Below the pieces are notes generated by a model, which had not been told where the DNA came from, did no database searches, and worked only from the letters and a program-made list of their open reading frames with translations. This document shows positions 4,005-35,558 of a stretch of 64,000 nucleotides of DNA, in pieces. The stretch spans positions 161,896 through 225,895 of the forward strand of contig NIVC01001881.1 in assembly GCA_002269645.1 (NCBI GenBank), written 5' to 3'. The number at the start of each line of letters is the position of its first letter. Within the stretch, counting starts at the first letter, position 1. Position numbers and translations under genes: made by a program. Source of the DNA: Macrostomum lignano (taxonomy: Eukaryota).

Positions 4005-4721
4005 ATTTTGCTATGCGAATATGCACTACTGATGTCAGACTGTCCGGCTTTAATTATATTCTAAGATAATCAATAAAATCATATCTAATTGTTACTGTTT
4101 TGCTGAATTTTATTATTTTTATTTTATTATAATCTTATTTTATGCTGCAGATGAAATTAAAATTCCCTACTTGAAATCTGGTTAATTTAATTGATTAATT
4201 CGGCAAGTTTGAAAATCAATATATTGAAATGCATAACGTTGTTGCTTCATTGTCTAGTTGTTTTAGGGGCTGATCTCCAAGGCACAGAGAGTGTACATGC
4301 CTGACGATTAGGGCCACTGTACACCCTGTGTGAGCGTGTGTGTGACTGCGTGCTTGCATACAGTATTGGAAGTTAGTGGAATGGGCAGAAGTGGTGTGTG
4401 GGGGACACAGCCGTCCTGCAAATATTTGCTATTTATTGTTTCGTGGGAAACAAGTATTTTCTTGGTGCTTTCACAACTGGCAAATTTAAGCAAACTGAAA
4501 AGCAACAAGTGAAACATGAATTGCTGCGCTCTCTGTGCTGGATAGTGCTTCACCTTGCGGATTTATTTCCAACATACCGTCTCAAAAGAGATCGGTAAAT
4601 TTTGGGGTAGTTCTACGCAGGTATACAATTTTGTAATGCATTCAAAAGTTTAGATGTATTTGTCTTGACTACAGGTCGATGGTTGCTTTCGTCGACTCGT
4701 CTATTTCATTTGGTGTTTTGC

Positions 4722-5969
4722 TTAGTACAGATAGGCAGGTACAAGCCATTTTTTGTTCCTGAAGCCGTCGGAGAGCCACTTCTTGTTCCTGAAGCCGTCG
4801 GAGGGCCACTTCTTGTTCCTGAAGCCGTCGGAGAGCCACTTCTTGTTCCTGAAGCCGTCGGAGAGCCACTTCTTGTTCCTGAAGCCGTCGGAGAGCCACT
4901 TCTTGTTCCTGAAGCCGTCGGAGAGCCACTTCTTGTTCCTGAAGCCGTCGGAGAGCCACTTCTTGTTCCTGAAGCCGTCGGAGAGCCACTTCTTGTTCCT
5001 GAAGCCGTCGGAGAGCCACTTCTTGTTCCTGAAGCCGTCGGAGAGCCACTTCTTGTTCCTGAAGCCGTCGGAGAGCCACTTCTTGTTCCTGAAGCCGTCG
5101 GAGAGCCACTTCTTGTTCCTGAAGCCGTCGGAGAGCCACTTCTTGTTCCTGAAGCCGTCGGAGAGCCACTTCTTGTTCCTGAAGCCGTCGGAGAGCCACT
5201 TCTTGTTCCTGAAGCCGTCGGAGAGCCACTTCTTGTTCCTGAAGCCGTCGGAGAGCCATTTCTTGTTCCTGAAGCCGTCGGAGAGCCACTTCTTGTTCCT
5301 GAAGCCGTCGGAGAGCCACTTCTTGTTCCTGAAGCCATCGGAGAGCCATTTCTTGTTCCTGAAGCCATCGGAGCGCCACTTCTTGTTCCTGAAGCCATCG
5401 GAGAGCCATTTCTTGTTCCTGAAGCCATCGGAGAGCCACTTCTTGTTCCTGAAGCCATCGGAGAGCCACTTCTTGTTCCTAAAGCCATCGGAGAGCCATT
5501 TCTTGTTCCTAAAGCCATCGGAGAGCCACCTCTTGTTCCTGAAGCCGTCGGAGAGCCAATTCTTGTTCCTGAAGCCGTCGGAGAGCCACTTCTTGTTCCT
5601 GAAGCCGTCGGAGAGCCACTTCTTGTTCCTGAAGCCGTCGGAGAGCCACTTCTTGGTTTCTTGTCGATAGTCTGCCACCTCATGGACTCCGGTTACTCCA
5701 TCCTTGGTCTGTAAAAATGAAGTTGAAATTTAAATAGCACTTCAACCCAGAATGGCCATAAATTTCTATAACTGTCTAAATCGAATTTCGCACTTACGAT
5801 GTCACCTGAGGCCCCGTCGACAGAAGCAGTTGAGAATGCAAGAACTGAAAATGGTAATGATGCGAATCAAGCAACGTGAAACTTCATTAAACCTTGGAAT
5901 AAGCAAATACGAGCGATGTGCCATGATGCACATACCACAAGCGGCAACAAGCCAAGCAGTTGGTCGCAT
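4722..5969 (-). CDS. Putative neuropeptide precursor (~355 aa): signal peptide + 30 x KK-WLSDGFRN. Exons 5969-5936, 5844-5798, 5708-4722
   Basis: Spliced N-terminus MRPTAWLVAACVLAFSTASVDGASGDI|TKDGVTGVHEVADYRQETKKWLSDGFRN.... Donors GTATGT and GTAAGT with phase-matched acceptors. Most repeat variants are synonymous in this frame (GAC/GAT, TTC/TTT, AAG/AAA). Minus-strand AATAAA at 4562-4567. Confidence 0.85.
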
Positions 5970-6854
5970 CTTTGCCGGTGTTGCAAGAACACTGTTCGTT
6001 TAGTTTTATTATTTTCTTTAAATTCTGACAAAGAGGTTGGATTTTATTCAGCTGATTGAAGTCTCTTGATTCCTTGACTCAGCGAAGGAAAAGCGAAGGT
6101 ATTTCGCAGACTTACATGGAGGCGTCCATGCGCCTCCGCTCCGCATCCAGTTAAAGGTCTTGTCGGTGCTTCGACCAATCAGAAATGTTCGCCCAAATTT
6201 ATCAGTTTTAACGACAGTGAAGCCGCCTGCCAAGTTAAAACAGTCAGTTTTAACGCATTTTTCGTTGTGTCAATAGTTGAATTTCCGTTTAAACAAAAAT
6301 GCATTGTTTGAGTTGTATAAGGTTCTAGAGTGAATGCAGTGTCTGTGCTGATTCCCTTGCAAAATTCTGCATAGAAAACTGCTGTCAAAGTTAATTTGGC
6401 AGCCGGTTCCGCCTTCGTCAGCTGTGCTCAATTTTCCGTGTATATCAAATTCTTCATCAAACTATATTCTGCTGGGGAACACAGATTGCTTGGCCCGGTA
6501 AAGGAGCCTCCTGATTGAATTTCCTGCATAGCTTGGCTTCTCCCGGAACAATATGTGCTCTTCTAGCGGAGCCTTGCATGGCTTGACTTTGGCTTGTTCG
6601 AGATGCAATCTGCATGCGTCCAAGAGTTGCTTGCAACATTGATCAGATTAAGCGGCCACTCTTTCAGGGCAATCTTTTCGGCTATTCAGGTCGAGGTTCA
6701 GATTGTTTAATCGCAACAAAGTACACCATATATTTCAACATGAATTTTCAGTAACATAACACTCGTTCACCCGACCGTCAAATCAGTCATCGAAAAAAGT
6801 CAAGACGCCCGGTTAGCATTTTAGTATACTCCCGTCGTGTCCTAAGAAAAATAT

Positions 6855-7455
6855 GGCCACTTCAGGACATAGGTTTCCACTTCAGGACATAGGTGGCAAC
6901 TTCAGGACATATGTGGCCACTTCAGGACATAGGTGACCACTTCAGGACATAGGTGGCCATGCACTTCAGGACATAGGTGGCCACTTCAGGACATAGGTGA
7001 CCACTTCAGGACATAGGTGACCACTTCAGGACATAGGTGGCCACTTCAGGACATAGGTTGGCACTTCAAGACATAGGTGGCCACTTCAGGACATAGGTGG
7101 CCACTTCAGGACATAGGTGGCCACTTCAGGACATAGGTGGCCACTTCAGGACAATAGGTTGGCACTTCAGGACAATAGGTTGGCACTTCAGGAATAGGTT
7201 GCCACTTCAGGACATAGGTGGCCACGTCAGGACATAGGTGGCCACTTCAGGACATAGGTGGCCACTTCAGGACATAGGTGGCCACTTCAGGGCATAGGTG
7301 GCCACTTCAGGACATAGGTGGCCACTTCAGGACATAGGTGGCCACTTCAGGACATCGGTGACCACTTCAGGACATAGGTGGCCACTTCAGAATATAGTTG
7401 CCTACTTCAGGACACACGTGGCCAATTCAAGACTCGGCTGGTCACTTCAGGATAC
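6855..7455. repeat. 20-bp minisatellite (GGCCACTTCAGGACATAGGT)
   Basis: About 29 tandem copies. Confidence 0.95.
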
Positions 7456-9368: not shown

Positions 9369-11848
9369 ATGGCGGAAACGAGTGAATGGCGGGAGGACAT
9401 GCGAGATACATTCAACATGTTCGACAAGAACGGAAATGGAGAAATCGAAGTGAACGAGCTGAGAACCGTTATCCAGTGCCTGGGACAGAATCCCACCGAG
9501 AAGGACGTACAGGTAAGAATCAGATAGAACATGATTAGGGTCGAGGGATGAGAAGAATATTGACTGCTAAGGATAGAAAAGATATTCGTACAAAGTAAAG
9601 ATAGTGAGACAATTAGGGTGGATGAGTGTGGTAAATGGTATGGTACTAGAGTAAAAAAACTCGGCGTGTGGTAAATAGTATGGGAGTGCGGTAAAGACTA
9701 GGCGGAGTTTTAAAGATTAGGGGGTGTAGTAAATAGTAAGAGTGGGGTAAGAATGACAATAAATGCATTTCCAAAGTGAGATTATTACACAGCCGTGTTT
9801 GCAACATAAAATTTTAATGCTTTTCTGCAGCTGATGATTCAAGAGTACGACCTAAACAAGGATGGTACAATCAATTTTGAGGAATTCTGCCAGGTGGGTG
9901 ATGTATTGTCAGTCACTCAAACATGTTTATGATAATCTGATTATTAATAATTTAATAATTTTTATTCAATCAATAAAAATCAACTCCAGATGATGAAAAA
10001 TCGAATCAAAACGGTCGAGTCCAAGCAGAACGAAATGAAGGTGGCGTTTCAGATGTTCGACAAAAATGGCGATGGGTGAGGGCTCGATCAGGTGTACTTA
10101 CCGCTTTCTGATGCATTGTTAAGTACAGGTCGCCATCGGGGGGGGACCCGATGGGTCATGTCCCTCTCACAGTAAAAGCTTTTGGGTAGACTGCAATGCT
10201 TTGTCACCTCCACCTAATTGTGACCCGTTGTGAGGAAATCAAAAGTTTTTCTTCAGGGCGCCAAATTGAGTGCCTGCCTGCGCGCCAAAATGAGTGCCTG
10301 CCTGCGCGCCAAAATGAGTGCCTGCGCGCCAAAATGAGTGCCTGCCTGCGCGCCAAAATGAGTGCCTGCAGCGCCAAAATGAGTGTCTGCCTGCGCGCCA
10401 AAATGAGTGCCTGCCTGCGCGCCAAAATGAGTGCCTGCAGCGCCAAAATGAGTGTCTGCCTGCGCGCCAAAATGAGTGCCTGCCTGCGCGCCAAAATGAG
10501 TGCCTGCCTGCGCGCCAAAATGAGTGCCTGCAGCGCCAAAATGAGTGTCTGCCTGCGGCGCCAAAATGAGTGCCTGCCTGTGGCGCCAAAATGAGTGCCT
10601 GCCTGCGGCGCCAAAATGAGTGCCTGCAGCGCCAAAATGAGTGTCTGCCTGCGGCGCCAAAATGAGTGCCTGCCTGTGGCGCCAAAATGAGTGCCTGCCT
10701 GCGGCGCCAAAATGAGTGCCTGCAGCGCCAAAATGAGTGCCCGCCTGCGGCGCCAAAATTAGTGCCTGCCTGCGGCGCCAAAATGAGCGCCTGCAGCGCC
10801 AAAATGAGTGCCCTGCCTGCGATGCCAAAATGAGTGCCTGCGGCGCCAAAATGAGTGCCCTGCCTGCGGTGCCAAAATGAGTGCCTGCGATGCCAAAATG
10901 AGTGCCCTGCCTGCGGCGCCAAAATGAGTGCCTGCAGCGCCAAAATGAGTGCCTGCAGCGCCAAAATGAGTGCCTGCGATGCCAAAATGAGTGCCCTGCC
11001 TGCGGCGCCAAAATGAGTGCCTGCAGCGCCAAAATGAGTGCCTGCAGCGCCAAAATGAGTGCCTGCGGCGCCAAAATGAGTGCCTGCAGCGCCAAAATGA
11101 GTGCCTGCAGCGCCAAAATGAGTGCCTGCGGCGCCAAAATGAGTGCCTGCCTGCAGCGCCAAAATGAGTGCCTGCAGCGCCAAAATGAGTGTCTGCCTGC
11201 GGCGCCAAAATGAGTGCCTGCCTGTGGCGCCAAAATGAGTGCCTGCCTGCGGCGCCAAAATGAGTGCCTGCAGCGCCAAAATGAGTGCCCGCCTGCGGCG
11301 CCAAAATAAGTGCCTGCCTGCGGCGCCAAAATGAGCGCCTGCAGCGCCAAAATGAGTGCCCTGCCTGCGATGCCAAAATGAGTGCCTGCGGCGCCAAAAT
11401 GAGTGCCCTGCCTGCGGTGCCAAAATGAGTGCCTGCGATGCCAAAATGAGTGCCCTGCCTGCGATGCCAAAATGAGTGCCTGCGATGCCAAAATGAGTGC
11501 CTTCGATGCCAAAATGAGTGCCTGCCTGCGATGCCAAAATGAGTGCCCTGCCTGCGGTGCCTAAATGAGTGCCTGCGGCGCCAAAATGAGCGAACAACGC
11601 CAATTCTCAGAATATTGTACATGTAGGAATAGTCATGTAGAATGCTTGCTGTCCCCCCCCCCTACAATAAAATCCATGCGACAAAAAACTCCAGGAAAAT
11701 CAGCAGCAACGAGCTGATGGAGGTGATGACGAAACTCGGCGAGAAGCTGACCATGGACGAAGTCAAAGAGATGATTACCGAGGTTGACGTTAACAACGAC
11801 GGGTTCATCGACTATGGAGAGTTCGTGCAGATGTACGCGACCAACTAG
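9369..11848 (+). CDS. Calmodulin-like protein, 148 aa, four EF-hands. Exons 9369-9512, 9831-9893, 9990-10075, 11695-11848
   Basis: Canonical loops [36 protein letters not shown] and [16 protein letters not shown] introns in phases 0,0,2. Too divergent to be canonical calmodulin. Confidence 0.92.
10257..11590. repeat. Variable 20-25-bp minisatellite (GCCAAAATGAGTGCC[TGCC/CTGCC]TGC) in calmodulin-like intron 3
   Basis: More than 50 units of mixed length, which breaks any reading frame. Confidence 0.95.
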
Positions 11849-13197: not shown

Positions 13198-15459
13198 TCA
13201 AATATACATCATCATCTTGATGAAGTTGTCCTGCTCCAAAGCCTCCTTTGTCTTCACAGTCGCTTCGTAGGTAGTAAAAGCGGTCCTCATTCGCACCGAT
13301 AGCAGGATGAAATCCTCGAAGCTCACGACGCCCTTAGTTGGGTCCGTATACCGCATGGCAACCGTCTCGAACACCTTGTTGCTCAGATTGTAGCCGGCAG
13401 CTTTCAAAGCGTCGCGCAGCTCGAACGAGTCAAATGAGCCATTTCCATCGGCGTCTTTCTCTTTGAAAATTGTCTTTAGCAGGCGGATCTGGTTCCAAAG
13501 CACTTTGAACTCGTCGAATTCCATGTAGCCGGACATGTTCAGGTCCATCAGAGCAAGCATGCTGCGACAGGCTTCGGCGCTGAATCCGGAAAACTCCTTC
13601 ACCTCTTTGCCGAAGGATCTGTTCAAGATCTGCTGCAGCTGGAATGCGTGAATTCGACCCGCGCCGCCGGAGAAGCCCTGGAAGGCTTTGCGCAACGGTT
13701 CCTCGTTCTCCGGTGCGCTGACGGGGGCGGCGATGGCCGGACTGACCTCCATCTTTGTCTCCGAGTCCAGCACAGCCGCGAGGTTCGGCTTTTCGGAGAA
13801 CATGCGCAGTATGAATTGCGCCTCCTCGTTCGGATTAAAGGTAGAGGGCACGATCACGTATCGACCCGGGGGTAGCTTGTGCCGGCCGCTCACCTCGCGT
13901 TGATTTACAAACGCCGACTTATCCGTCTGTTTGTTATAGCGGAAGAACTTCTGGTCAAGGGGGCTGTCATTATGGCCTCTCAGCTGGTAAATAGCATAGC
14001 CAATGGTGAAATATTCGCCGCCAACTGTGATCTTGCGCACGTCCTTCTGCATTAGGCCGACAATAATGGTGCCCAGATTTTCATCGTCTTCTTCATCCGG
14101 GTCGACAATCTCCACGCGGAACTGCTGATTAGTGTGGAAGCTGTCAATGAAGTTCCTGCAGCCGCCGGCGCTCACGTTCTTCTTCCACTCGCCCTTCTCT
14201 ATGCTGATCTCCCAGCGGCGCTTCTTGGCGGCGGCGCCCTTCACAGTGCCGGACATGGTCTCTGGGCACAGGTGGCAAATCTCCAGTTTAGTGAACTCCT
14301 GGACAAAGTCTTTGAAGGCCATCCAGAACTCGCCATCATCGCTGGCGTCCATTTTCAGCCGGGATTTCTCATCCGCGTTGACTTGGTTCCACAGGGGGCT
14401 CCGGTCGCTCCAGTCGCCCTTCCACTCGCACTCGTTGCCCCACGGGTTGCGAACCCGGACTAGCGATTCTTCCTGGCCGTTTTTCAGTTTGCAATTTCTG
14501 ACGTCAGTCACAGAGTAAGCGTGTCCAGTGATCAGGCCGTTATCTAGTTCGCCCTCAATCTCCTCGCTCTCAATGCTGCATCCCATTAGAGACTCGCTTT
14601 TGTTGGCCTGAAACATCACGTTAAACAAGTCGGCCGGTGCCTTGTTGAGATCAAAGTTTTCGCACAGGCCGCCGGTGAAGTCCTCCATAGCCTCGGACTG
14701 GCTCCCACCTGTCAGGGCCTCATAGCTACCGTTGACTTTAGCGTAGGCTTTCTCTAGTAGGGCCGACCAGAACTCGTTGCGATCCTGGCTGCGCATGAAG
14801 CAGAGCCGCCCCGCCTTAGTAGGCAGCCGATCATCGACAACCACCTCTTTCCAGCGGCCAAAGTGCCAAAACCGGAAACGGAACATTCCGCAATAGCCTG
14901 CGTCGAAATCCTGACCGGGAGGAACCACTCGGTCGAATAAACTTTTGTTCATAGAAAGGGAAGCAATTGAAGCCAGTAGCCAACAATCGCCCAGTTCTCC
15001 TTGTTTAACATCGAACCGGCTGACACCATCGCTAATAAACATTGGCGATTGGCAGATTTCTTTCGGCCGCTTCCACACATACCTCTGATTAGGCCTCGAA
15101 GGAAAAATGCTGCGACCCTCTGCTGGAAATTTGGGATCCTCGTACAATTGCTTGGATTGAATCAGATTCTTTCTCAGCTCCTCAAAGTCTAGCTTTTTTA
15201 CAACTGCATCTTGCAAATTTCCAGTGGAGGCGGCGACTAAAGCACGAGGTGATTTGTTAGCAGATCCGATGGCGGGTTTGAGTGCGTCCTGTTGCCGAGA
15301 TTGCGGCTGTTGCGGCGGCTGTTGTTGCGACGGCGCCGGCTGCTGCGGCCTCGGCTGAGCCTGGCTTGAAGCTGTTACAGTAGCTGGACTCGCAGCAGAT
15401 TGCGTCTTCGAGTCGTTGCTGGTGTTCAGGTACTCGCGAACAATCTTGACGCGTGACAT
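13198..15459 (-). CDS. Classical calpain (CysPc protease core, C2-like domain III, penta-EF-hand), 753 aa, single coding exon
   Basis: QGELGDCWLLA (Cys), GHAYSV (His), RVRNPWG (Asn), GGCRNF domain III motif, C-terminal EF-hands, Q/P-rich N-terminal extension. Confidence 0.96.
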   Translation of the reverse strand: MSRVKIVREYLNTSNDSKTQSAASPATVTASSQAQPRPQQPAPSQQQPPQQPQSRQQDALKPAIGSANKSPRALVAASTGNLQDAVVKKLDFEELRKNLIQSKQLYEDPKFPAEGRSIFPSRPNQRYVWKRPKEICQSPMFISDGVSRFDVKQGELGDCWLLASIASLSMNKSLFDRVVPPGQDFDAGYCGMFRFRFWHFGRWKEVVVDDRLPTKAGRLCFMRSQDRNEFWSALLEKAYAKVNGSYEALTGGSQSEAMEDFTGGLCENFDLNKAPADLFNVMFQANKSESLMGCSIESEEIEGELDNGLITGHAYSVTDVRNCKLKNGQEESLVRVRNPWGNECEWKGDWSDRSPLWNQVNADEKSRLKMDASDDGEFWMAFKDFVQEFTKLEICHLCPETMSGTVKGAAAKKRRWEISIEKGEWKKNVSAGGCRNFIDSFHTNQQFRVEIVDPDEEDDENLGTIIVGLMQKDVRKITVGGEYFTIGYAIYQLRGHNDSPLDQKFFRYNKQTDKSAFVNQREVSGRHKLPPGRYVIVPSTFNPNEEAQFILRMFSEKPNLAAVLDSETKMEVSPAIAAPVSAPENEEPLRKAFQGFSGGAGRIHAFQLQQILNRSFGKEVKEFSGFSAEACRSMLALMDLNMSGYMEFDEFKVLWNQIRLLKTIFKEKDADGNGSFDSFELRDALKAAGYNLSNKVFETVAMRYTDPTKGVVSFEDFILLSVRMRTAFTTYEATVKTKEALEQDNFIKMMMYI

Positions 15460-16282
15460 TTTGCTGGATCTAATTTTTTACCCTATTCAGAATGTCGCTT
15501 TTGGTGTAGCCAAATTTTTGTAGCCAAATAGCGCTTTTCTATATCATATTCGGTGTCTCTAAAACTTATAGTTTTTTTAACAAAAGGGGACGAACAGAAG
15601 AGATGGCTGGAACGGAGACTTAATTTAAAAGCCTCGTGCATGCCACACAGCTATAAGACTGCCTGTCCATTGTTCTCAGCAATCCGCTCTTACCCAACTG
15701 TACTGCAGCAACTTGCCGGTTTGAATATGAGCGAATTCGCCCACTGAGCCCCCCCCCCCCTGGAATTGTGTTCAGCGCAAAGCAACTGCGTACGACATTC
15801 TGTCGCCCCAACTTAAATATTGACCATTGTATAAGCATAACGAATGAGTAATGCAATTTTGCGACAAGTGACGGAGGAGCTCACATACGCTCGGACGCAT
15901 CTAATTGAGGCCGGTTCAAACTACCGCTAGTGGCTTCGCGGGCCAAAGATTGCTCAATGAATCAGCCACTCGCGGTAAAGTGAACCGCGGCTTAAGCCAG
16001 CTAAAGTGATGCAGATTTGCAGTGAATAGTTAACTGTCAAATAATAAAAGAAAAATACCAAAACTAAGGCTCGAAGAATAATAGTGATTGATATACTCAA
16101 CCGCTTCAATAATTTAATTGTTTATTACCCCACCACCAATTGTCCGTTTTAAAGGTGACAAAACAGAATCAGTTCGGTTTGTTAATGTCAACTAACACTG
16201 CAACTAGTCATTGGTTAGTATAGATTCCTTCATCGAATACAAGCTTTGGTGGATTAGAACAGACATTTCCTTTGCCACGAGA

Positions 16283-17385
16283 TTAGTAAGATCCGTAGCT
16301 TCCCTTATCACCAGACGGATAAGGATCGTAGCTTCCAGTGCCGCCAGACGGATAGGGGTCAAAGCTTCCAGTGCCGCCGGACGGATAGGGGTCAAAGCTT
16401 CCAGTGCCGCCAGACGGATAGGGGTCAAAGCTTCCAATATCGGCAGACGGGTAGGATCCATAACTTCCATAATCCATATCCCGTTTCTTCCAATACGAGC
16501 TGCTTGGGTAGTAAGAGGAGTAGCTGCTTGGGTAGTAAGAGGAGTAGCTGCTTGGGTAGTAAGAGGAGTAGCTGCTTGGGTAGTAAGAGGAGTAGCTGCT
16601 TGGGTAGTAAGAGGAGTAGCTGCTTGGGTAGTAAGAGGAGTAGCTGCTTGGGTAGTAAGAGGAGTAGCTGCTTGGGTAGTAAGAGGAGTAGCTGCTTGGG
16701 TAGTAAGAGGAGTAGCTGCTTGGGTAGTAAGAGGAGTAGCTGCTTGGGTAGTAAGAGGAGTAGCTGCTTGGGTAGAAAGAGGAGTAGCTGCTTGGGTAGA
16801 AAGAGGAGTAGCTGCTTGGGTAGAAAGAGGAGTAGCTGCTTGGGTAGAAAGAGGAGTAGCTGCTTGGGTAGAAAGAGGAGTAGCTGCTTGGGTAGTAAGA
16901 GGAGTAGCTGCTTGGGTAGTAAGAGGAGTAGTAGGAGCTATATTCACGCTTCTTGTAAGAGTACGAGTAGGTGGGGTAGCTGCTGCTCGGGTAGTACGAG
17001 TAGGTGGGGTAGCTGCTGCTCGGGTAGTACGAGTAGGTGGGGTAGCTGCTGCTCGGGTAGTACGAGTAGGTCGGGTAGCTGCTGCTCGGGTAGTACGAGT
17101 AGGTCGGGTAGCTGCTGCTCGGGTAGAAAGAGCTGTATTCACGCTTCTTGTAAGAGTCATCGAAGCTTGTTGGATAGTAGCTTGGATCGTAGTATGAAGA
17201 AAAATCGTTTAGCGGTTTCTAAAATTTTCACAATAGTTTTTTAAAAAACATTAACGATGACATAAAACCGAACGAGTATGAGCAAACAGAAGAATGAAAT
17301 ACATTTATTAGTTGATTGCACTTACCGCATCAGCGGCAGCAGATGCCAGAATCAAGAGTGCTGTCAGCAAGCAAACCTGACGCAT
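16283..17385 (-). CDS. Secreted Tyr/Ser/Pro-rich repetitive polyprotein (~331 aa) with three KKR sites. Exons 17385-17326, 17218-16283
   Basis: Exon 1 is MRQVCLLTALLILASAAADA followed by GTAAGT. Exon 2 is open for 312 codons in phase 0: KPLNDFSSYYDPSYYPTSFDDSYKKR, (YPSSSYPTYSY)x5, KKR, (YSSYYPSS)x18, WKKR, DMDYGSYG(GSFDPYPSGGT)n. Minus-strand AATAAA at 16121-16126. Confidence 0.85.
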
Positions 17386-18109
17386 GATTGCTAGTGATCA
17401 GATACTATATTAGCTTCAACCTATTATAAAGAATAAACTTTCTGTTGGTTAAGTTTTTAGGAAAAATTCAACAGCTATATATGCTAGAAGTTTGATGGCA
17501 CAGCTGCGAAGGAACTTAACTGTTTTTGCTGACGTGTTGCATTCTATATGCGGTTGACGCGGAGAAAAAACTTGCTGTTGTCTTAGGCGACTGACAGGTA
17601 GGCGAAGTAGCAGCTATCTACTATATTTGCCCTTCAATAGTGCAGCTGAAGGTCTGGGTAGCAAATTTGCTTTCACCCACTAATTGACTCCACTTCCGGT
17701 AGTTAAATCACGAATCAGTCAGTCAATTAGATTTATATTTGTTTAGCTTCTCTAGCCAAGGGTGACAAAACCAAAGCCAAGCACTAAATAAAAGAATAAA
17801 CAGTTTTTTTAGAGAAGCACTTCTTCACTGATGAACCAGCTGGTCCGAAAAGCAAATTTTGAGAACGGGACTTTACTTAACTTTTGCAGGTGAACAGGTG
17901 AAAATTTCATTGAAATCTCCTTAAAACGGCAGATCAATAAAATGAAATCAATGAAAGTCAAAACTGAAACGATGCATTTTTTGTTGTTTATTAATGATTG
18001 TGCAAATTTCATAGTTGATTCGCATGCAGCATTGTACAATTATTTTTTTAATCGCGTCATGTCAAACATAAAACAAGCGCTATTTCAAAAATGAAGGCAG
18101 CGTCAAAGA

Positions 18110-18480
18110 TTCAATGGGGAATTCTCTAGGATTTCAAGGCTCATGGGAAATTTCTGAGATGTCAAGGCATATGGGGGAATGCTGAGATGTCAAGGCTTAT
18201 GGGGGAATTGCTGAGATGTCAAGGCTTATGGGGGAATGCTGAGATGCCAAGGCTTATGGGGGAATGCTGAGATGTCAAGGCTTATGGGGGAATGCTGAGA
18301 TGTCAAGGCTTATGGGGGAATGCTGAGATGTCAAGGCTTATGGGGGAATTGCTGAGATGCCAAGGCTTCGGAGGGATTGCTGAGATGCCAAGGCTTCGGA
18401 GGGATTGCTGAGATGCCAAGGCTTATGAGGGAATGCTGATATGTCAAGTCATGTGAGGGAATGCTGAGATGTCAAGGCTT
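18110..18480. repeat. 28-29-bp minisatellite (GCTGAGATGTCAAGGCTTATGGGGGAAT)
   Basis: Tandem copies; the same family resumes at 22040-22195. Confidence 0.9.
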
Positions 18481-21400
18481 ACAGGGTTCAGCACGCCTGT
18501 GTAGCATGAGACAGACCAGGCCTACGAGTTAAGGTCTGCGATCCTACACACCTGCACCCCCTCTATTCTGGTGCAGGAATGGCAGAACTCTCTCCAAGCT
18601 GACGATCACAAGCCGACCCAGGGGTTCACGCCCCGCATGTGTTCAAGGCAGCTCTAGGGCTGCTGGACTGACTGGGCTCCGGCGGCGGCAACCCATCCGT
18701 GGCCAGCTGGCCAATTTGGGTACGGGCCCCGCCCGGAAGTGAACCTGTGCGTATCAGGTACCTCTGGCCACGGCTCTGAGGAACAGGTATCACCCTCTGA
18801 CTTTAACAGGGTATGCGGCCAGTCCGCAGGCTCCGGGGACAGCCTCTTGTCCCCCTCAAGTGTTAGCACCGCGCTGATGGTCCTTTGGTTCGGCCTCTGG
18901 TTTTTCCAAGCCGGGCTCTTAGCCGGGGAGTTTCTCGGTTGCTAGCGGTCGGGCCGGTAAGGGCTTAAGCCACCCCCCGGTCGCTACCTCTTGGCCTGGC
19001 TGTTGGGTTTGGGGTTACGGCCCAGCGGCTTCTCACCTCAGATAGTCCCTAGGCCTTTCAGCGACTCATGGAGTATTCATTTACTTCCGACACGTCTGAA
19101 GCTGCTGGAGTACCAACCGAGGTTGGTACCGCGGCCCAGCCGGACATTCGCAACACCGGAACCCCCAGTGCCTCTCAGTCAGCCCCTGCCGCCGCTCAGG
19201 ATAATACCGGAGTGGCTGGACAAGACAGCGGACCTCAGATTTCTAAAAAGAAGGCCCGTAGCATTGCTCGCTACAAAGCTTTTCTCCAACGCAAAGCGGA
19301 GGAACGGAGGAATGCGAAAGCCGCCCCTCCGGCCGCCTCCGAGGAGGGTGCCGGTAACTCTGCGAACCCCGCGGAGGAGCCGACATCCGACAAGGGGGTG
19401 GACCCCGCGCGCCGGTCTGATGCGTCAGGTGCCGCCGAAGCTCCTGGTGCGGCTGGCCCCTCTCGTGACGGGACCTCTGCCCGTGTGGAAGCTCCCACGG
19501 CCGTGGAGGGATCCAAAGCGGGGGGTGCTGGCCAAACCACCGAGCCAAAGTGCACCTATGCGGCTATGGCCAAGAGGCAGCCGGCCCTGATTATCCAAGG
19601 CCAGGAGACGCCTCTTAAGGCCGAACAGCTCGACCTACTCTGGCGCAGGTCGGACTCCCACCTGGTCTAGATGGCCTTGAGTGGTACCGCTATTCAAGTC
19701 CAAAAGACGAAAGTCGAGGACCAAGCCCTCCATATCCAGCCCGCCGACAGTCAGTCGGGACAGCAGCTCCTCGAGATGCTGAAAGCATTCGACTGGGGTA
19801 CGGAGTTGAAAAACCTGTTTATCTATAAGGAGGACGAGCGACCCCGGACACACCGGCACCGTGCCTGGATTCCGGCTCGCAGCTGCATCACCAAGGCCGA
19901 CGAGCTGCGTCGCCTGCTAGTGGCTACCAACCCGGAGCTACCGGCAAACGGTGTCGTAGTTCACGAGACCATCTCCAAGCCGGGCGGAGACGGTTTCACG
20001 GCTATTCTTGGACTGTCGGATAGCTGGATGCTCCGCTATCCGGACATGTCCATCATCTCTGTCGGGCTGATGCAGATTCAGCTCTTTAGCTTTGAGTCTG
20101 ACGCCACCCGCCCACCGCCCCCGGAGAAGCGTAAGCGGGCAGTCGGGGGCTCTGCCAGGCAGAAACGCCCAGGAAAAGAAGCTCCCGTTCGTCTCGACCC
20201 CTCCGAGGACGTGGACCCTGTCAGAGGGAAAGCCGCGAAAGCTGCAGCAACAGGCGGACGTGGAAAGGGCCGGAAACCCCTCCCCCCCCGGAACACTATC
20301 CGCTCTGGTCTGACTCAGCGCGCGAAGCAGCTGCTGGGCACCGCCAGGGCCAACAACCGCAGCAACCCCCAGCCCAGTGTCACCACTGCGCCCCCCTGGA
20401 AAACCGGGCCGAGAGCGAGAATGCCGCCCTTGTGGTGGCCCCGCCCTCGACCATGGAGACCATCCGGGAGGAGCCCATGGAACTGGAGCCTGGAGCTATC
20501 GACTAGGCAGAAGAGACAGCTCTCCTGCACAACTCGCCCTGAACCGGCAGGAAGCTGCGCGGACCACTCGTGGAATCCCCAGAGTGGACATCCTGCAGCT
20601 AAATCTACACCACTGCATCGCGGCCTCGACCAACCTGATGCAGGTGGCAAACTTTGTAAAACCTTCTCCAGGAGCCCTGGACGAAGAAAGGTAAGATCCC
20701 GAATATTCCTACTGGTTTTGACTGTTTTCAGGACCCCCAAAACCCCAGAGCAGCCATGTTTGTGTCTATCCATCTCAAAGCTTGGCACAGACCGGACCTC
20801 TCTGACAGAGACCTCTGTGCCATTCGGTCCAACCACATTATCACCAACCGCACGGTCATCATCGCCTCGATTTATATCCCTGGCGATGGCCCCGCGGTTC
20901 CACCCAACCTCACCTCCCTCGTGGACTACTGTTCTAACCGTAGGTTCGAGCTGCTGGTGGCGGGCGACGTCAACGCCCACCACGCCCACCAAACCCACTG
21001 GGGCAGTAATACCTCCAACAGCAGAGGCGAGGAACTCCTTGCTTACATCTGCACCACCAACACTGAGTTTTGCAACATTGGTGGAACCCCCACTTTGACA
21101 ACTGGCGTTGGACGGAGGCCCTCGACGTTACCCTCGTCTCCCATGGCTTGGCTCCTTTAGTCAAGGACTGGGAGGTGTGGGACGAAGAGGAGTCTCTGTC
21201 TGACCATCGCTTCGTTTGTTTTCGATTGCAATCCTCTTGCCCCAAGCCTCACATCCTGTGGAAAAGTAACGTTCGGAACACTGACTGGACGGCTTTTCGC
21301 GGAAACCCTGAAATGTCAGACAGATCAGCTGACCAATGCCGCTCAAACCACCTGTCAGGAAGTGGATGACCTTGCAGACTTGATCAGCAAGACCGTCCTG

Positions 21401-22026
21401 ACAGCCCACGAGGCTTCCTGTCCTCTCAAAGCCTACAAAGGCAAAAATCCGCCTCCTGGTGGCACCCGGCGCTTGGATCCCTTCGGCGCAAGGCAAATTG
21501 CCTCCAACGGAAAGCTCGCAAGAGCAAGGACCCAGCCGACCTGGCCGCCTATAAAGACGCAATCCGCGACTTTAAGCGTGAAACCAGGAAAGCCAAGTCC
21601 GACAAATGGCGCCAATGCTGCGCGGAGTAAGAAGGCACCCGCCCTATTTACCGCGTGGTTAAGGCTCTCACCGTCGACAAAATGTCAAAGCTCTCATTTA
21701 TTAAAAGACCGGACGGCCGGCTTGCTGAGAACCCTGGGGAATCGCTGGACATCATGCTCACCAGCTCTTTCCCACGTGCCGCACCGCAGCTAGGCCCACC
21801 GGGTACGTGCCAAGAGCCTGACAAGAGGTTACGGTAGTCTTCATACCCAAACCAGGGAAGGGAGACTATCATATCTGCCAAAGCTTACCGCCGTATCAGT
21901 CTGACGTCTTTTTTCCTCAAACTGATGGAACGGCTGGTGCTCTGGCGCCTCCTCCTCGTGGAGCAGAAGAACTCCCCGCTCTCCCCCAATCAGCGCGCCT
22001 TTCGTCCTGGACGCTCCATCGAAAGT
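18481..22026 (+). mobile_element. Decayed non-LTR retrotransposon, probably LOA/R1-type: 5'UTR, ORF1, AP-endonuclease, start of RT; 3' half missing
   Basis: ORF1 from 19068 (TYAAMAKR...HRAWIP; in-frame TAG at 19668). ORF2 motifs ILQLNLHH, LQEPW, AGDVNAHH..WGS..SNSRGEEL, SDHRFV and VVFIPKPG..AYRRISLTSFFLKLMERLV..NQRAFRPGRS. Multiple frameshifts and an internal deletion. Confidence 0.9.
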
Positions 22027-32865: not shown

Positions 32866-35558
32866 GGGTGCGTTCGAGTGACTCAAAATGACTTAAACTG
32901 CCATTTTAACGTCCTTAGTAAAACAAATGTTAAGCAGACTAAATGTAAAAATAATCTAGGTAAATGATAGTCAAATTACAATTAAGAATTAATTCAATTT
33001 CTAAAACCGGTCTAAGATTAAAAAAACGTCGCCTATACTTCTTCCAACTCAACCTGAACGCCTAGGCACCGTTTTAACTTCGCTCGCAATTACCACATTT
33101 AATCGTAATTGAATATTTTGTATTCTTCACCTTTGTTCTATCATTTGCTTTCACGTCTTTTTGCTCAGTTCGCTGCCCGTCATTATAGTCTTTGAATAAT
33201 TGCTTAGTACTAATATTGTTTATTTATTAATTGTTATTACATAGTAGTTTATTTGGACTTGGAATATAGTCACTATTATTGTTGCTACTGTTATTATTTT
33301 TCTATTGGAGTTTTGTACTTTTTCAGCTTGGTTCTTATTCTTCAATATAGTATCTGAGTGAACTTCATGTTATAGTTTTGTCTTTCTATTTATTCCGTAG
33401 CTATTGTAATAACAAGGAATTATTCACTTTGGTTAAATCATATTATTTTATTGCTATCTGGCCTATTTTTTTCTCAATGAATAGTTGACTGACTTACCTT
33501 GTTTTTTATTCTTTTGCTTGTTTGAATATAGTAATTAGCTCCTTATTTATTATCTTTATTCATCACAGTCAACTTATATAAACCAAAAAAACATTTCTTT
33601 CAAATATACCTCTGCTTAGTTAGAAAGATTAGTAAGAATTAAAACGGATTAACAATTAACGTTAATTGTACTTCAGAGAGAAATTGTGCAGGCAGCATAT
33701 TGATTCAATTAGCTTGCAGGTGGACTCCATGCTGTCCGAATTTATGTAATTGATTCGTTGCCATCGACTTGATAAAATTCCAAAAGTTCTCTCGACACAC
33801 TGACGCAGTTTACTAAGCTTCTTATTGAACTGTTTTTTCCCCGGAGAAAGATTGCGTCCCTTATATGGTGTTAGCAAGTAGTCGGAACATGGATATGCCG
33901 AATCACCAATCAGAAGAAATCCCCACTGGACGTGTAAATGCTGTATTTCTTGTCGAGCAGAAGAATATTGAAAAGCTCTTGCATCGTTCGAACTACCGGG
34001 CCAGCCAATGAAGTAGTCAATGATGTAGGTCGAACTGGTGCTAATTACCTGTAACTTGACGGAATGAAATTGCTTCCTGTTGTAATATGACTCGCCATTG
34101 TCAGACGGACATCTTATTTTGACTTCCTTTACGTCAATGGCACCAATAATACTTGCTGTAAAGAAATTTTTAGATCGCTGACTGAATAACTGAGCATGCT
34201 TGTGGCACTCTTCATAGGATGGAAATCGAACCAGATCTCTGCAAAATCCACTCTCGGACATTGCACTTAGAACCCTTCGGATTATAAGACAAACCGTGCT
34301 CTTAGATAAGTCAAAAACTGTTCCAATAGATTCGTAGGACTCCTGGGTTGCTAAATAGCGAAGAAAAACCAAGACCATTGAAATAGCGGTCGTTCCTTTT
34401 GGCGAATGCAGAGTTAGGAACGTTGCTAGTTGCAGAACTAACGACTGGACAGCAGTTCGAGGCAATCTAAAATAATCTCGGAACTGGTAGTCGTTGAAGT
34501 GGTAAACAGTAGTATCAACGAACTCGGCTACTTTTGCTCTAGGTTCCTTAATGGACCTGGCTACAATAGCTTGAACTTCACTTACAGAGTCACATTGTTG
34601 CTGTACAAAGTCACGAACTTCACCAGTAAAAGAATTTGCTGGTTCCATTGCAAAATTTAAATAATAGAGGACAGCAATATACAATCTATAGAAAATATGA
34701 TTTGGTATACTTCGTATATAAGTTGACTGTGATGAATAAAAAATAGTGACAATTAATTTCAACCAATCAAGAAACAAGTCAACAGAAGCAAAGAAATATG
34801 ACAAATTAAGCACAATATATAAATTAATAACTAGTAATGTCCAATGACAATGAATGAGAGCTAATTACTATATTCAAACAAGCAAAAGAATAAAAAACAA
34901 GGTAAGTCAGTCAACAATACATTGAGAAAAAAATAGGCCAGTTAGCAATAAAATAATATGATTCAACCAAAGTGAATAATTCCTTTGTATGATAGAAAGA
35001 CAATACTATAGAAAACTATAGATACTATATTATAGAATACAATATACAATACTATACTATAGATACAATACTATAGAATAAATAGAAAGACAAAACTATA
35101 ACATGAAGTTCACTCAGATACTATATTGAAGAATAAGAACCAAGCTGAAATAGTGACTATATTCCAAGTCCAAATAAACTACTACGTAATAACAATTAAT
35201 AAATAAACAATATTAGTACTAAGCAATTATTCAAAGACTATAATGACGGGCAGCAAACTGAGCAAAAAGACATGAAAGCAAATGATAGAACAAAGGTGAA
35301 GAATACAAAATATTCAATTACGATAAATGTGGTAATTGCGAGCGAAGTTAAAACGGTGCCTAGGCGTTCAGGTTGAGTTGGAAAAAGTATAGGCGACGTT
35401 TTTTAATCTTAGACCGGTTTTAGAAATTGAATTAATTCTTAATTGTAATTTGACTATCATTTACCTAGATTATTTTTACATTTAGTCTGCTTAACATTTG
35501 TTTTACTAAGGATGTTAAAATGGCAGTTTAAGTCATTTTAAGTCACTCGAACGCACCC
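32866..35558 (-). mobile_element. PIF/Harbinger transposon with ~680-700-bp TIRs
   Basis: Termini GGGTGCGTTCGAGTGACT; arms 32866-33541 and 34858-35558 are inverted copies; 3-bp TSD ATA; encloses the transposase ORF. Confidence 0.92.
33662..34648 (-). CDS. Harbinger (DDE_Tnp_4 / HARBI1-like) transposase, ~328 aa from first ATG
   Basis: FRDYFRLPR, FLRYLATQESY, IGAID, YYNRKQFHSVKLQ, GWPGSSNDARAF, LIGDSAYP, RQCVERTFGILSSRW, CCLHNF; no frameshift. Confidence 0.93.
   Translation of the reverse strand: MEPANSFTGEVRDFVQQQCDSVSEVQAIVARSIKEPRAKVAEFVDTTVYHFNDYQFRDYFRLPRTAVQSLVLQLATFLTLHSPKGTTAISMVLVFLRYLATQESYESIGTVFDLSKSTVCLIIRRVLSAMSESGFCRDLVRFPSYEECHKHAQLFSQRSKNFFTASIIGAIDVKEVKIRCPSDNGESYYNRKQFHSVKLQVISTSSTYIIDYFIGWPGSSNDARAFQYSSARQEIQHLHVQWGFLLIGDSAYPCSDYLLTPYKGRNLSPGKKQFNKKLSKLRQCVERTFGILSSRWQRINYINSDSMESTCKLIESICCLHNFSLKYN

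What the first reader, a model, noticed from the sequence alone, without database searches (positions are those of the whole stretch)
4722..5969. Hidden 30-copy neuropeptide prohormone (WLSDGFRN)
Seen: what looks like a 30-bp satellite is the third exon of a gene. Two short upstream exons with consensus splice sites and matching phases build a signal peptide (MRPTAWLVAACVLAFSTASVDG...), then a short spacer, then 30 units of KK-WLSDGFRN. The recurrent substitutions (GAC/GAT, TTC/TTT, AAG/AAA) are silent only in this frame, one variant keeps a dibasic site (KR), and a poly(A) signal follows. 28 units are exact, with single WRSDG and WPSDG variants and one KN junction. Established: signal peptide plus dibasic-flanked tandem peptides is the architecture of invertebrate neuropeptide precursors. 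Inference: prohormone convertase releases a non-amidated octapeptide (no C-terminal Gly; calculated [M+H]+ about 994.5). I do not recognise this peptide as belonging to a named family.
Basis: partly seen in the sequence, partly recalled or inferred. Interest (0 to 1): 0.9.

Follow-up and report, generated by a model that had tools for sequence, protein, structure and literature searches.

The report
Flatworm multi-copy secreted peptide precursor
The 30-bp "satellite" is the last exon of a real, spliced gene of the flatworm Macrostomum lignano. It encodes a signal peptide followed by 30 lysine-flanked copies of the octapeptide WLSDGFRN. This makes it a plausible new neuropeptide or hormone precursor, but where it is expressed and whether it is cleaved remain untested.

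Summary
Minus-strand exons 5969-5936, 5844-5798 and 5708-4722 are joined by GT..AG introns of 91 and 89 nt. They give a 355-aa protein with a hydrophobic signal peptide, an acidic spacer, 30 KK-WLSDGFRN units and a short tail.

The window is Macrostomum lignano contig NIVC01001881.1. The same assembly holds two near-identical paralogous loci with 24 and 37 units.

Older UniProt models of M. lignano use the same frame and the same exon 2/3 junction; one is named "Secreted protein". One model holds a divergent paralog, KK-W[IL]GDGFRS x11.

At the window locus itself, the deposited coding sequence is in the wrong frame.

No homolog outside M. lignano, no Pfam family and no literature mention were found. 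The precursor architecture is therefore well supported. Cleavage at the KK sites and neuronal expression are inferred only, and an intact, strongly basic secreted repeat protein remains a serious rival.

Verdict: a new member of a known kind, of moderate interest.

The parts
5936..5969 (-). Exon 1 (coding part): ATG plus the first 11 codons and 1 nt, MRPTAWLVAAC(V). This is the n-region and most of the hydrophobic core of the signal peptide. The start context is caaagATGc, with A at -3.
   Evidence: translation and phase. Identical in both paralogs, 0/34 differences. The deposited coding sequence of paralog L005 starts at the equivalent ATG.
5845..5935 (-). Intron 1: 91 nt, GTATGT...CATTACCATTTTCAG, phase 1, 40% GC.
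   Evidence: The splice sites are kept in L004 and L005 (the donor is GTAGGT in L005). There is a 1-nt indel in L005.
5798..5844 (-). Exon 2: (V)LAFSTASVDGASGDI. It holds the end of the signal peptide, with the predicted cleavage near TAS/VDG or VDG/ASG, and the start of the spacer.
   Evidence: The same exon and the same 3' junction appear in UniProt models P0024 and P0134. Paralog differences are one synonymous and one Gly>Ser.
5709..5797 (-). Intron 2: 89 nt, GTAAGT...CATTTTTACAG, phase 0, 32% GC.
   Evidence: It carries 5 substitutions and an 11-nt indel (not a multiple of 3) relative to L004 and L005, as expected of non-coding sequence.
5655..5708 (-). Exon 3, pre-repeat spacer TKDGVTGVHEVADYRQET. 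Together with ASGDI it forms an acidic propeptide with pI 4.4.
   Evidence: It aligns with the spacer of the divergent paralog (HEVSGYDDDERLT-KKW).
4755..5654 (-). Exon 3, array of 30 x 30 nt units, each encoding KK-WLSDGFRN. There are 28 exact octapeptides, one WRSDGFRN and one WPSDGFRN. One junction is KR and one is KN.
4722..4754 (-). Exon 3 tail: KKWLVPAYLY plus the TAA stop (4724-4722). The tail is not conserved; paralog L005 ends KKWLL* after a 1-nt insertion.
4562..4567 (-). AATAAA poly(A) signal, about 155 nt downstream of the stop. The same sequence (ggaaataaatcc) is present in both paralogs.
   Evidence: Read.
6116..6146 (-). Alternative upstream first exon (ATGCGGAGCGGAGGCGCATGGACGCCTCCAT|GTAAGT, encoding MRSGGAWTPP-). 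The older ML2/MAKER-type UniProt models join it to the exon 2 acceptor at 5844. Whether it is actually used is unresolved.
   Evidence: P0024 (A0A1I8FXQ2) and P0134 begin MRSGGAW[TK]PPF+LAFSTASVDG. The sequence was read. Its hydrophobic core is much weaker than that of exon 1.
4706..5683 (-). Range of the coding sequence deposited for this locus: 295 aa, from the ATG at 5683 to the stop at 4706, in the SGSPTASGTR frame. I judge this a mis-framed ORF call inside exon 3.
   Evidence: L002 19777-20754 maps to window 5683-4706.. All recurrent variants are replacements in this frame.

Best explanation
This is a three-exon, protein-coding gene of Macrostomum lignano, on the minus strand at 5969-4722. 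It is one of three near-identical loci plus at least one divergent paralog.

The gene encodes a small secreted polyprotein. It has a signal peptide of about 19-22 residues, an acidic spacer of about 23 residues, and then 30 head-to-tail copies of KK-WLSDGFRN.

Proposed mechanism (inferred):
1. The signal peptide directs the precursor into the ER.
2. In a regulated secretory cell, a PC2-type prohormone convertase cuts after each Lys-Lys, in the context R-N-K-K|W with Arg at P4.
3. A carboxypeptidase E-type enzyme trims the two lysines.
4. This releases about 28 copies of the non-amidated, net-neutral octapeptide WLSDGFRN ([M+H]+ 994.474).
5. Minor products are WRSDGFRN, WPSDGFRN, an uncut 18-mer at the KN junction, the spacer peptide and WLVPAYLY.

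The peptide would act as an extracellular signal. The most likely role is a neuropeptide or peptide hormone. A pheromone or a gland-derived peptide is an alternative within the same mechanism.

The array is a young, unstable coding minisatellite, with 24, 30 and 37 units at the three loci, so peptide dose per transcript varies between copies.

Shown: gene structure, reading frame, secretory N-terminus, repeat architecture, paralogs, and the presence of PC2 in this species. Inferred: cleavage, trimming, cell type and bioactivity.
For: Organism and locus. The intronless calpain of the window is found only on NIVC01001881.1 of GCA_002269645.1. NIVC00000000 is the M. lignano Mlig_3_7 assembly, and neighbouring proteins are named M. 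lignano.

Gene model.
- Canonical splice sites and correct phases give 355 aa.
- Exons are 52-56% GC and introns 32-40% GC.
- Paralog L005 has a deposited coding sequence at 7093..5639 of 420 aa, which the same exon model reproduces exactly.
- Only 7 GT-AG models fit that record, and all start MRPTAWLVAA and read WLSDGFRN.
- That annotation derives from RNA-seq-guided transcripts (StringTie/TACO/BLAT) plus TransDecoder (PMC5730564).
- Independent ML2-based UniProt models share the frame and the exon 2/3 junction. A0A1I8FXQ2 is named 'Secreted protein'.

Constraint.
- Over 91 units from the three loci there are 15 variant types. The five that are synonymous in this frame account for 66 of 79 occurrences, and the three commonest are all synonymous (chance about 10/455).
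- Replacement variants occur only once or twice each.
- One common variant is a stop in frame 3, and all common ones are replacements in frame 2.
- Indels between paralogs (11, 4, 1 and 1 nt) lie only in introns and the 5' flank.
- The divergent paralog A0A1I8IJ38 keeps KK, the 8-residue length and the W-[LI]-x-D-G-F-R-x core through 11 units, while the spacer has diverged (68% identity overall).

Secretion. The h-region AWLVAACVLAF has a mean Kyte-Doolittle value of 2.5. It is preceded by Arg and followed by small residues (TAS, VDG).

Processing machinery. A PC2 homolog is expressed in the M. lignano nervous system and is essential (PMC4490696). Signal sequence plus multiple dibasic sites is the criterion that found MS-verified planarian prohormones (PMC2953531).

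No stable fold. AF2 on the single sequence gives pLDDT 48.8 and pTM 0.17. This is weak evidence.
Against: - No expression site, no junction reads for this locus and no peptide data could be obtained.
- The sites are almost uniformly KK, which from my own knowledge of convertase preferences is used less often than KR. There is no C-terminal Gly, so the commonest neuropeptide modification is absent.
- The uncleaved protein would be strongly basic (pI 10.8; 18% Lys, 10% Arg, 9% Trp, 9% Phe). That composition also suits an intact structural or adhesive secretion.
- M. lignano makes many novel secreted gland proteins, for example 38 of the 65 prostate-limited candidate proteins analysed carry a SignalP signal peptide (PMC5977470).
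- The first exon is contested: older models use 6146-6116, which gives a much weaker hydrophobic core.
- The array is very young (97% identity), so part of the 'constraint' signal could reflect recent amplification rather than selection. The substitution statistics rest on few independent events.
- No ortholog was found outside M. lignano.
Confidence: 0.55

Rival explanations
1. The same gene and frame, but the product is not cut into peptides. It is secreted intact as a roughly 40-kDa, highly cationic tandem-decapeptide protein from a gland (mucus or rhabdite, adhesive or cement, pharyngeal, or prostate/seminal fluid). There the Lys/Arg plus Trp/Phe repeats would act through charge and cation-pi interactions, for example cohesion, coacervation or binding to anionic surfaces or sperm.
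For: The mature protein has pI 10.8 with 18% K, 10% R, 9% W and 9% F. KK rather than KR dominates and there is no amidation signal. Copy number is free to vary (24, 30, 37), as in structural repeat proteins. M. lignano expresses many lineage-specific secreted gland proteins (PMC5977470). Other satellite-containing secreted ORFs lie in the same window. From memory, tandem decapeptide repeats typify mussel foot protein-1.
Against: The unit lacks Tyr, Pro and Cys, which mark known adhesive and structural repeats. The strictly kept dibasic pair at every unit boundary, with Arg at P4, survives in the divergent paralog while neighbouring residues change. That is what a cleavage site predicts, although a structural motif could also keep it. 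The small size and lack of any domain fit prohormones better than the very large multi-domain M. lignano adhesive proteins (my recollection of the literature). No confident fold was predicted.
Confidence: 0.27
2. A transcribed and translated gene whose repeat is a recent, effectively neutral minisatellite expansion inside a small secreted protein. The many copies would have no specific function, and the gene may be on its way to decay.
For: The array is 97% identical at the DNA level. About 15% of this genome is simple and tandem repeat (PMC5730564) and the window is full of minisatellites. Unit numbers differ between near-identical loci. In L005 a 1-nt insertion truncates the C-terminus. Occasional units have lost the KK site (KN, NK, TK).
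Against: The frame is kept open over 24-37 units at three loci. The spread variants are all synonymous in that frame. A clearly older paralog (W[IL]GDGFRS x11) still keeps the unit length, the core and KK, so the repeat has persisted through substantial divergence.
Confidence: 0.12
3. The array is not coding in this frame. Either it is a non-coding minisatellite, or the deposited frame (MRWQTIDKKPRSGSPTASGTR..., from the ATG at 5683) is the real product.
For: The deposited coding sequences at this locus (295 aa) and at L004 (265 aa) use that frame. Five of six frames are open across the array, so openness does not discriminate.
Against: That ATG lies about 135 nt into the spliced coding sequence, downstream of a good-context ATG in exon 1. 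Its product has no signal peptide. Every common variant is a replacement in that frame (T>M x35, S>L x20). The paralog's deposited coding sequence and four UniProt models use the WLSDGFRN frame. No homolog was found for the frame-2 product.
Confidence: 0.04

Closest known systems
Planarian and other flatworm prohormone genes (Schmidtea mediterranea npp/spp sets, Collins et al. 2010, PMC2953531)
   Same: The same phylum and the same defining architecture: a small protein with a signal sequence, no domains, and several copies of a short peptide between basic cleavage sites. Processing there depends on PC2. M. lignano has a neural, essential PC2 homolog (PMC4490696).
   Different: No sequence similarity to any described flatworm peptide was found. 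The peptide is not amidated, the sites are KK, and the copy number (24-37) is far above what I recall for flatworm precursors. There is no MS or in situ evidence here.
High-copy invertebrate neuropeptide precursors, such as the molluscan FMRFamide precursor (about 28 copies) and cnidarian Antho-RFamide precursors (recalled from memory)
   Same: Dozens of nearly identical short peptides directly abutting each other, separated only by basic residues, behind a signal peptide and an acidic spacer.
   Different: Those peptides end in Gly and are amidated, and they use mainly KR or acidic/unconventional sites. Those families are ancient and widely conserved, whereas this one is so far confined to M. 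lignano.
Kexin/convertase-processed repeat polyproteins outside nervous systems: yeast alpha-factor, fungal KEX2-processed repeat proteins such as Ustilago Rep1, and the honeybee apidaecin precursor (recalled from memory)
   Same: A signal peptide plus tandem copies of a short peptide, each bounded by a dibasic site. This shows that the architecture predicts 'processed secreted peptide' rather than specifically 'neuropeptide'.
   Different: Different kingdoms or functions (pheromone, cell-wall peptide, antimicrobial). WLSDGFRN is net-neutral and too short to resemble known antimicrobial peptides.
Tandem-decapeptide secreted structural proteins such as mussel foot protein-1, and the flatworm adhesive proteins Mlig-ap1/ap2 (recalled from memory)
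   Same: A signal peptide, a 10-residue tandem repeat and a very basic, Lys-rich composition.
   Different: There is no Tyr/DOPA, Pro/Hyp or Cys in the unit. The protein is only 355 aa and has no domains. The unit boundary is a conserved dibasic pair.

Membership tests
Multi-copy peptide preprohormone (neuropeptide or peptide-hormone precursor, generic class) | N-terminal signal peptide | tested here: met
   Heuristic only. MR-PT, then the h-region AWLVAACVLAF (mean Kyte-Doolittle 2.5 over 11 residues), then small residues at TAS/VDG. SignalP was not available. A UniProt model with the other first exon is named 'Secreted protein'.
Multi-copy peptide preprohormone (neuropeptide or peptide-hormone precursor, generic class) | Repeated short peptide bounded by dibasic convertase sites | tested here: met
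   30 units: 28 KK junctions, 1 KR and 1 KN, with Arg at P4 in every unit. The same holds in paralogs with 24 and 37 units and in the divergent W[IL]GDGFRS paralog.
Multi-copy peptide preprohormone (neuropeptide or peptide-hormone precursor, generic class) | A spliced mRNA translated in that frame | tested here: met
   Indirect. The transcript-guided deposited coding sequence of paralog L005 matches the model. UniProt models share the exon 2/3 junction. No reads were examined for this locus.
Multi-copy peptide preprohormone (neuropeptide or peptide-hormone precursor, generic class) | Processing enzymes present in the organism | tested here: met
   From the literature: a PC2 homolog, RNA815_2403.2, is expressed in the M. 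lignano nervous system and is essential (PMC4490696).
Multi-copy peptide preprohormone (neuropeptide or peptide-hormone precursor, generic class) | C-terminal Gly for amidation (typical, not obligatory) | tested here: not met
   Units end ...FRN-KK, with no Gly before the basic pair.
Multi-copy peptide preprohormone (neuropeptide or peptide-hormone precursor, generic class) | Mature peptide detectable, and dependent on the convertase | not testable with these tools
   This needs peptidomics for m/z 994.474, with and without pc2 RNAi.
Multi-copy peptide preprohormone (neuropeptide or peptide-hormone precursor, generic class) | Expression in neurons or endocrine cells | not testable with these tools
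   No expression data were reachable. Text searches for the peptide found nothing.
Non-coding minisatellite | No frame-specific constraint, and not part of a mature coding transcript | tested here: not met
   The common variants are synonymous in only one frame. The array lies in an annotated spliced coding sequence at the paralog. A diverged paralog keeps the peptide.
Intact structural or adhesive tandem-repeat secreted protein | Signal peptide, short tandem repeats, extreme basic composition | tested here: met
   pI 10.8, 18% Lys, 10-residue repeat.
Intact structural or adhesive tandem-repeat secreted protein | Cross-linking or adhesive residues (Tyr/DOPA, Cys, Pro/Hyp) or carbohydrate- or matrix-binding domains | tested here: not met
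   The unit has no Tyr, Cys or Pro. The only Pfam hit is a low-complexity match to PF05287 in which no individual stretch passes.
Intact structural or adhesive tandem-repeat secreted protein | Gland-cell expression and presence of the intact protein in the secretion | not testable with these tools
   This needs in situ hybridisation and secretion proteomics.
Named bilaterian neuropeptide families (for example pedal peptide/orcokinin, recalled because they are multi-copy, non-amidated and contain D...GF) | Detectable sequence similarity of the precursor or peptide to family members | tested here: not met
   A phmmer search of 1.84 billion representatives was run. Among the best 150 hits, only M. 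lignano proteins carry the repeated W..DGF/KKW pattern. The other two motif hits (a fungal protein and a metagenome protein) lack the KK-bounded unit. The peptide is 8 residues, against roughly 12-16 for that family (from memory).

The most novel reading that the evidence does not exclude
WLSDGFRN and W[IL]GDGFRS form a Macrostomum-restricted, previously undescribed signalling-peptide family. Its genes grow and shrink by minisatellite dynamics: 24, 30 and 37 copies at three near-identical loci and 11 in an older paralog. This would be a live example of how a lineage-specific neuropeptide gene arises, and how its peptide dosage evolves, in a recently polyploid genome.
Probability: 0.35. Interest if true: 0.55.

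Novelty: new member of a known kind. Interest (0 to 1): 0.4.

Why it matters
If the peptide is real, it adds a high-copy, non-amidated, lineage-specific signalling peptide to M. lignano. This flatworm is amenable to transgenesis and RNAi, so ligand, receptor and behaviour could be tested directly.

The finding also has immediate curation value. Two of the three deposited coding sequences for this gene are in the wrong frame, and the older models use another first exon. Tandem-repeat masking would also hide the gene from peptide-precursor screens.

More generally, it shows that in a genome where about 15% is simple and tandem repeat, some "satellites" are exons.

Tried and rejected
- Three word-indexed protein searches were unproductive. 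The 355-aa product gave no hit. The frame-2 ORF gave only an unrelated bacterial repeat protein and a weak LigB hit. The HDAC6 zinc-finger tail, meant to reach paralogous loci, returned no M. lignano protein.
- Exact look-ups of guessed 295-aa deposited products, of the 355-aa product and of the L004 frame-2 ORF were not in the collection.
P0024 has no contig on record.
- Literature: the exact string WLSDGFRN is in no held paper. A DGFRN/DGFRS substring search was swamped by 'PDGFRs'. McVeigh 2009 and Koziol 2016 are not held. No M. lignano cell atlas was found. The Weber 2018 supplements do not contain the peptide. A 2026 differential-expression paper was irrelevant.
- The Pfam hit PF05287 (PMG) is a low-complexity artefact in which no individual stretch passes. 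Rfam found nothing in the window.
- The motif hits P0121 (ELSDGFRR x9, unannotated metagenome contig) and P0128 (Elaphomyces, QWKSDGFI) were judged chance repeat matches.
- AF2 gave no confident fold, so no fold search was run.
- Counting synonymous versus replacement variant TYPES does not discriminate between frames (5, 2 and 5 of 15). Only their frequencies do.
- Conservation of exon 1 (0/34 differences) is not significant by itself at about 3-7% background divergence.
Full report
1. WHAT IS IN THE SEQUENCE

TRF reports a 30-bp array at 4744-5655 with 30.4 copies and 97% matches. It is one of several dozen minisatellites in the window.

They join in frame to 1068 nt, giving 355 aa plus a stop. 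The introns are 91 nt (GTATGT...TTTTCAG) and 89 nt (GTAAGT...TTTTTACAG).

The product is MRPTAWLVAACVLAFSTASVDG / ASGDITKDGVTGVHEVADYRQET / 30 decapeptide units / KKWLVPAYLY. There are 26 KKWLSDGFRN units and one each of KN-WLSDGFRN, KR-WLSDGFRN, KK-WRSDGFRN and KK-WPSDGFRN.

Exons are 52-56% GC and introns 32-40% GC. AATAAA lies at 4567-4562. The monoisotopic [M+H]+ of WLSDGFRN is 994.474.

Open frames alone prove nothing here. Five of the six frames give ORFs of 266-349 aa across the array.

2. WHERE IT COMES FROM

The intronless calpain at 13198-15459 is found on a single public contig, NIVC01001881.1 of GCA_002269645.1. NIVC00000000 is the Mlig_3_7 assembly of the flatworm Macrostomum lignano, and cluster mates of the neighbouring proteins are named M. 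lignano.

The gene lies tail-to-tail with an HDAC6-type gene (Hist_deacetyl plus zf-UBP). It is divergent from an EF-hand gene, with the calpain beyond that. About 15% of this genome is simple and tandem repeat, and the assembly is partly redundant because of the DV1 karyotype (PMC5730564).

3. INDEPENDENT SUPPORT FOR THE GENE MODEL

(a) Paralogous loci. The calpain cluster led to two further loci with the same gene order.
- L004 (NIVC01004423.1) has 24 units.
- Via the EF-hand protein, which I reconstructed, L005 (NIVC01000084.1) has 37 units.
- At L005 the deposited coding sequence runs from 7093 to 5639 and has 420 residues. It gives exactly 420 aa.
- An exhaustive enumeration of GT-AG models with the recorded start, end and length leaves 7 products. 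All begin MRPTAWLVAA and all read the array as WLSDGFRN.
- That annotation was built from RNA-seq-guided transcripts (StringTie/TACO, BLAT-mapped de novo transcripts) with TransDecoder ORFs (PMC5730564). So a spliced minus-strand transcript with this frame is supported, at a copy about 98% identical to the window.

(b) Older gene models. A full HMMER scan of 1.84 billion representatives found four M. lignano UniProt entries.
- A0A1I8FXQ2 (85 aa, named 'Secreted protein') carries units 1-4 of this very locus, including the KN junction.
- A0A1I8FTA2 is L004-like.
- A0A1I8FF56 is L005-like and frameshifted.
- A0A1I8IJ38 is a divergent paralog (see section 4).
- All read the WLSDGFRN frame. The first two use the same exon 2 and exon 2/3 junction. 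However, they start from another first exon, at window 6146-6116 (MRSGGAWTPP-, donor GTAAGT), joined to the same acceptor at 5844.
- That N-terminus has a much weaker hydrophobic core (best 11-residue Kyte-Doolittle mean 1.06 against 2.51).

(c) The deposited coding sequence at the window locus. It spans 5683-4706 (295 aa), and the one at L004 is 265 aa. Both use the other open frame (MRWQTIDKKPRSGSPTASGTR...). That ATG lies inside exon 3 and the product has no signal peptide. I regard it as an ORF-calling artefact. This is the sense in which the gene is 'hidden' at this locus.

4. CONSTRAINT

Variants within the arrays. Across the 91 units of the three loci there are 15 variant types.
- Counting types does not separate the frames: 5, 2 and 5 are synonymous in frames 1, 2 and 3.
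- Frequencies do separate them. The five frame-1-synonymous types make up 66 of 79 occurrences (GAC/GAT 35, TTC/TTT 20, AAG/AAA 8+2, AGG/AGA 1).
- Every replacement type occurs once or twice.
- The three commonest types being synonymous has a chance of about 10/455. This is a rough figure, because the events are not independent.
- TTC>TTT is a stop in frame 3. All common variants are replacements in frame 2.

Differences between loci. The non-repeat coding sequence (135 nt) differs at four sites, two of them synonymous, and exon 1 is identical. All indels (11 nt in intron 2, 1 nt in intron 1, and 4 plus 1 nt in the 5' flank) lie outside the exons. These numbers are small and only consistent, not significant.

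The divergent paralog. This is stronger evidence. A0A1I8IJ38 has 11 units of KK-W[IL]GDGFRS and aligns from the spacer (HEV..Y...T-KKW) to the terminal partial unit (KKWIA against KKWLV) at 68% identity. The dibasic pair, the 8-residue length and the W-[LI]-x-D-G-F-R-x core are kept, while the spacer has changed.

5. WHAT IT MOST LIKELY DOES

Secreted peptide precursor. The protein has what defines a secreted multi-copy peptide precursor: a signal peptide, an acidic spacer, short identical peptides bounded by dibasic sites, no domain and no confident fold (pLDDT 48.8).
- The same criteria, signal sequence plus multiple dibasic sites, found planarian prohormones that were then confirmed by mass spectrometry (PMC2953531).
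- M. lignano has a PC2 homolog that is expressed in the nervous system and is essential (PMC4490696).
- I therefore propose cleavage after each KK (context R-N-K-K|W), carboxypeptidase trimming, and release of about 28 copies of non-amidated WLSDGFRN plus minor products. All of these steps are inferred.

Main rival: an intact, very basic secreted repeat protein (pI 10.8).
- It is favoured by the composition, by the near-exclusive use of KK and by the absence of an amidation signal. It is also favoured by the abundance of novel secreted gland proteins in this species (PMC5977470) and of satellite-bearing secreted ORFs in this window.
- It is disfavoured by the lack of Tyr, Pro and Cys, by the small size, and by the conservation of the unit boundary in the old paralog.

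Probabilities.
- Right frame and gene: above 0.9.
- Processed secreted peptide precursor: about 0.55, with a neuronal source about 0.35-0.4 overall.
- Intact secreted protein: about 0.27.
- Functionless young expansion: about 0.12.
- Non-coding or other frame: about 0.04.

6. COMPARISON WITH WHAT IS KNOWN, AND NOVELTY

No homolog was found outside M. lignano, no Pfam family applies, and the peptide string appears in no held paper.

By architecture it resembles high-copy invertebrate neuropeptide precursors and flatworm npp/spp genes. More broadly, it resembles any convertase-processed repeat polyprotein. It cannot be filed in a named peptide family.

The protein already exists in public databases as uncharacterised entries. 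The novelty is therefore the interpretation as a candidate new peptide family, and the correction of the frame at two loci: a new member of a known kind.

Copy number differs between loci (24, 30, 37), and in L005 a 1-nt insertion removes the C-terminal tail, so the tail peptide is dispensable.

7. VERDICT

Interest is moderate, at 0.4.

Noticed in passing
window 44499-46448 (-) and 50207-51120 (-): An ORF starting MNCVYLCILLFSLSCQLHTAWS (signal-peptide-like) runs into the 15-bp satellite at 44992-46327. It is followed by an ORF with a WSC domain (PF01822, E 6e-16). A second WSC-domain ORF (E 1e-15) sits beside the satellite at 50732-51120. These may be two paralogous secreted WSC proteins with satellite-encoded linkers.
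   Followed up: partly
window 4706-5683 (-); L004 15844-16641 (+): The deposited coding sequences for this gene at two of its three loci are in the wrong reading frame (SGSPTASGTR...; 295 and 265 aa). The third locus (L005 7093-5639, 420 aa) is in the right one. This is an annotation error worth reporting.
   Followed up: yes
window 16204-17160 (-) (L002 8075-9177): Another minisatellite pair (24-bp and 33-bp units) lies inside a called gene of 224 aa, with ATPLTTQA-type Thr/Pro/Ala repeats. The paralogs have 372- and 313-aa versions, so here too repeat number differs between loci.
   Followed up: no
window 13198-15459 (-): A complete 753-aa calpain (Peptidase_C2, Calpain_III, EF-hands) is encoded without any intron. 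It has two paralogs in the same assembly: 748 aa, and a 606-aa deposited model on a contig end.
   Followed up: partly
L003 13426-18530 versus window about 9369-11848 (+): In one paralog the EF-hand (calmodulin-like, 148 aa) gene has an intron swollen by a 5.1-kb array of a 56-bp satellite. That array is absent from the window copy, which carries a 21/47-bp satellite (10257-11590) instead.
   Followed up: no
window 33662-34813 (-): An intact-looking 383-aa Harbinger/PIF-type transposase ORF (DDE_Tnp_4, E 4e-33, plus HTH_Tnp_4) lies in an AT-rich stretch of 31-33% GC.
   Followed up: no
window 18000-21600: A GC-rich (58%) block with long overlapping ORFs and an endonuclease/reverse-transcriptase fragment (PF14529, E 5e-9). 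It is probably a degraded non-LTR retrotransposon.
   Followed up: no
window 53510-56186 and 59590-60919: A 2.7-kb (GATA)n microsatellite and a roughly 1.3-kb GA-rich tract. Both produce long spurious ORFs on the minus strand.
   Followed up: no
window 6116-6146 (-): The upstream alternative first exon begins ATG CGG ... GCA TGG (MRSGGAW...). The favoured exon 1 begins ATG CGA ... GCT TGG (MRPTAW...). They have the same phase and nearly the same length (31 against 34 nt). They may be duplicated alternative first exons, or this may be coincidence.
   Followed up: no
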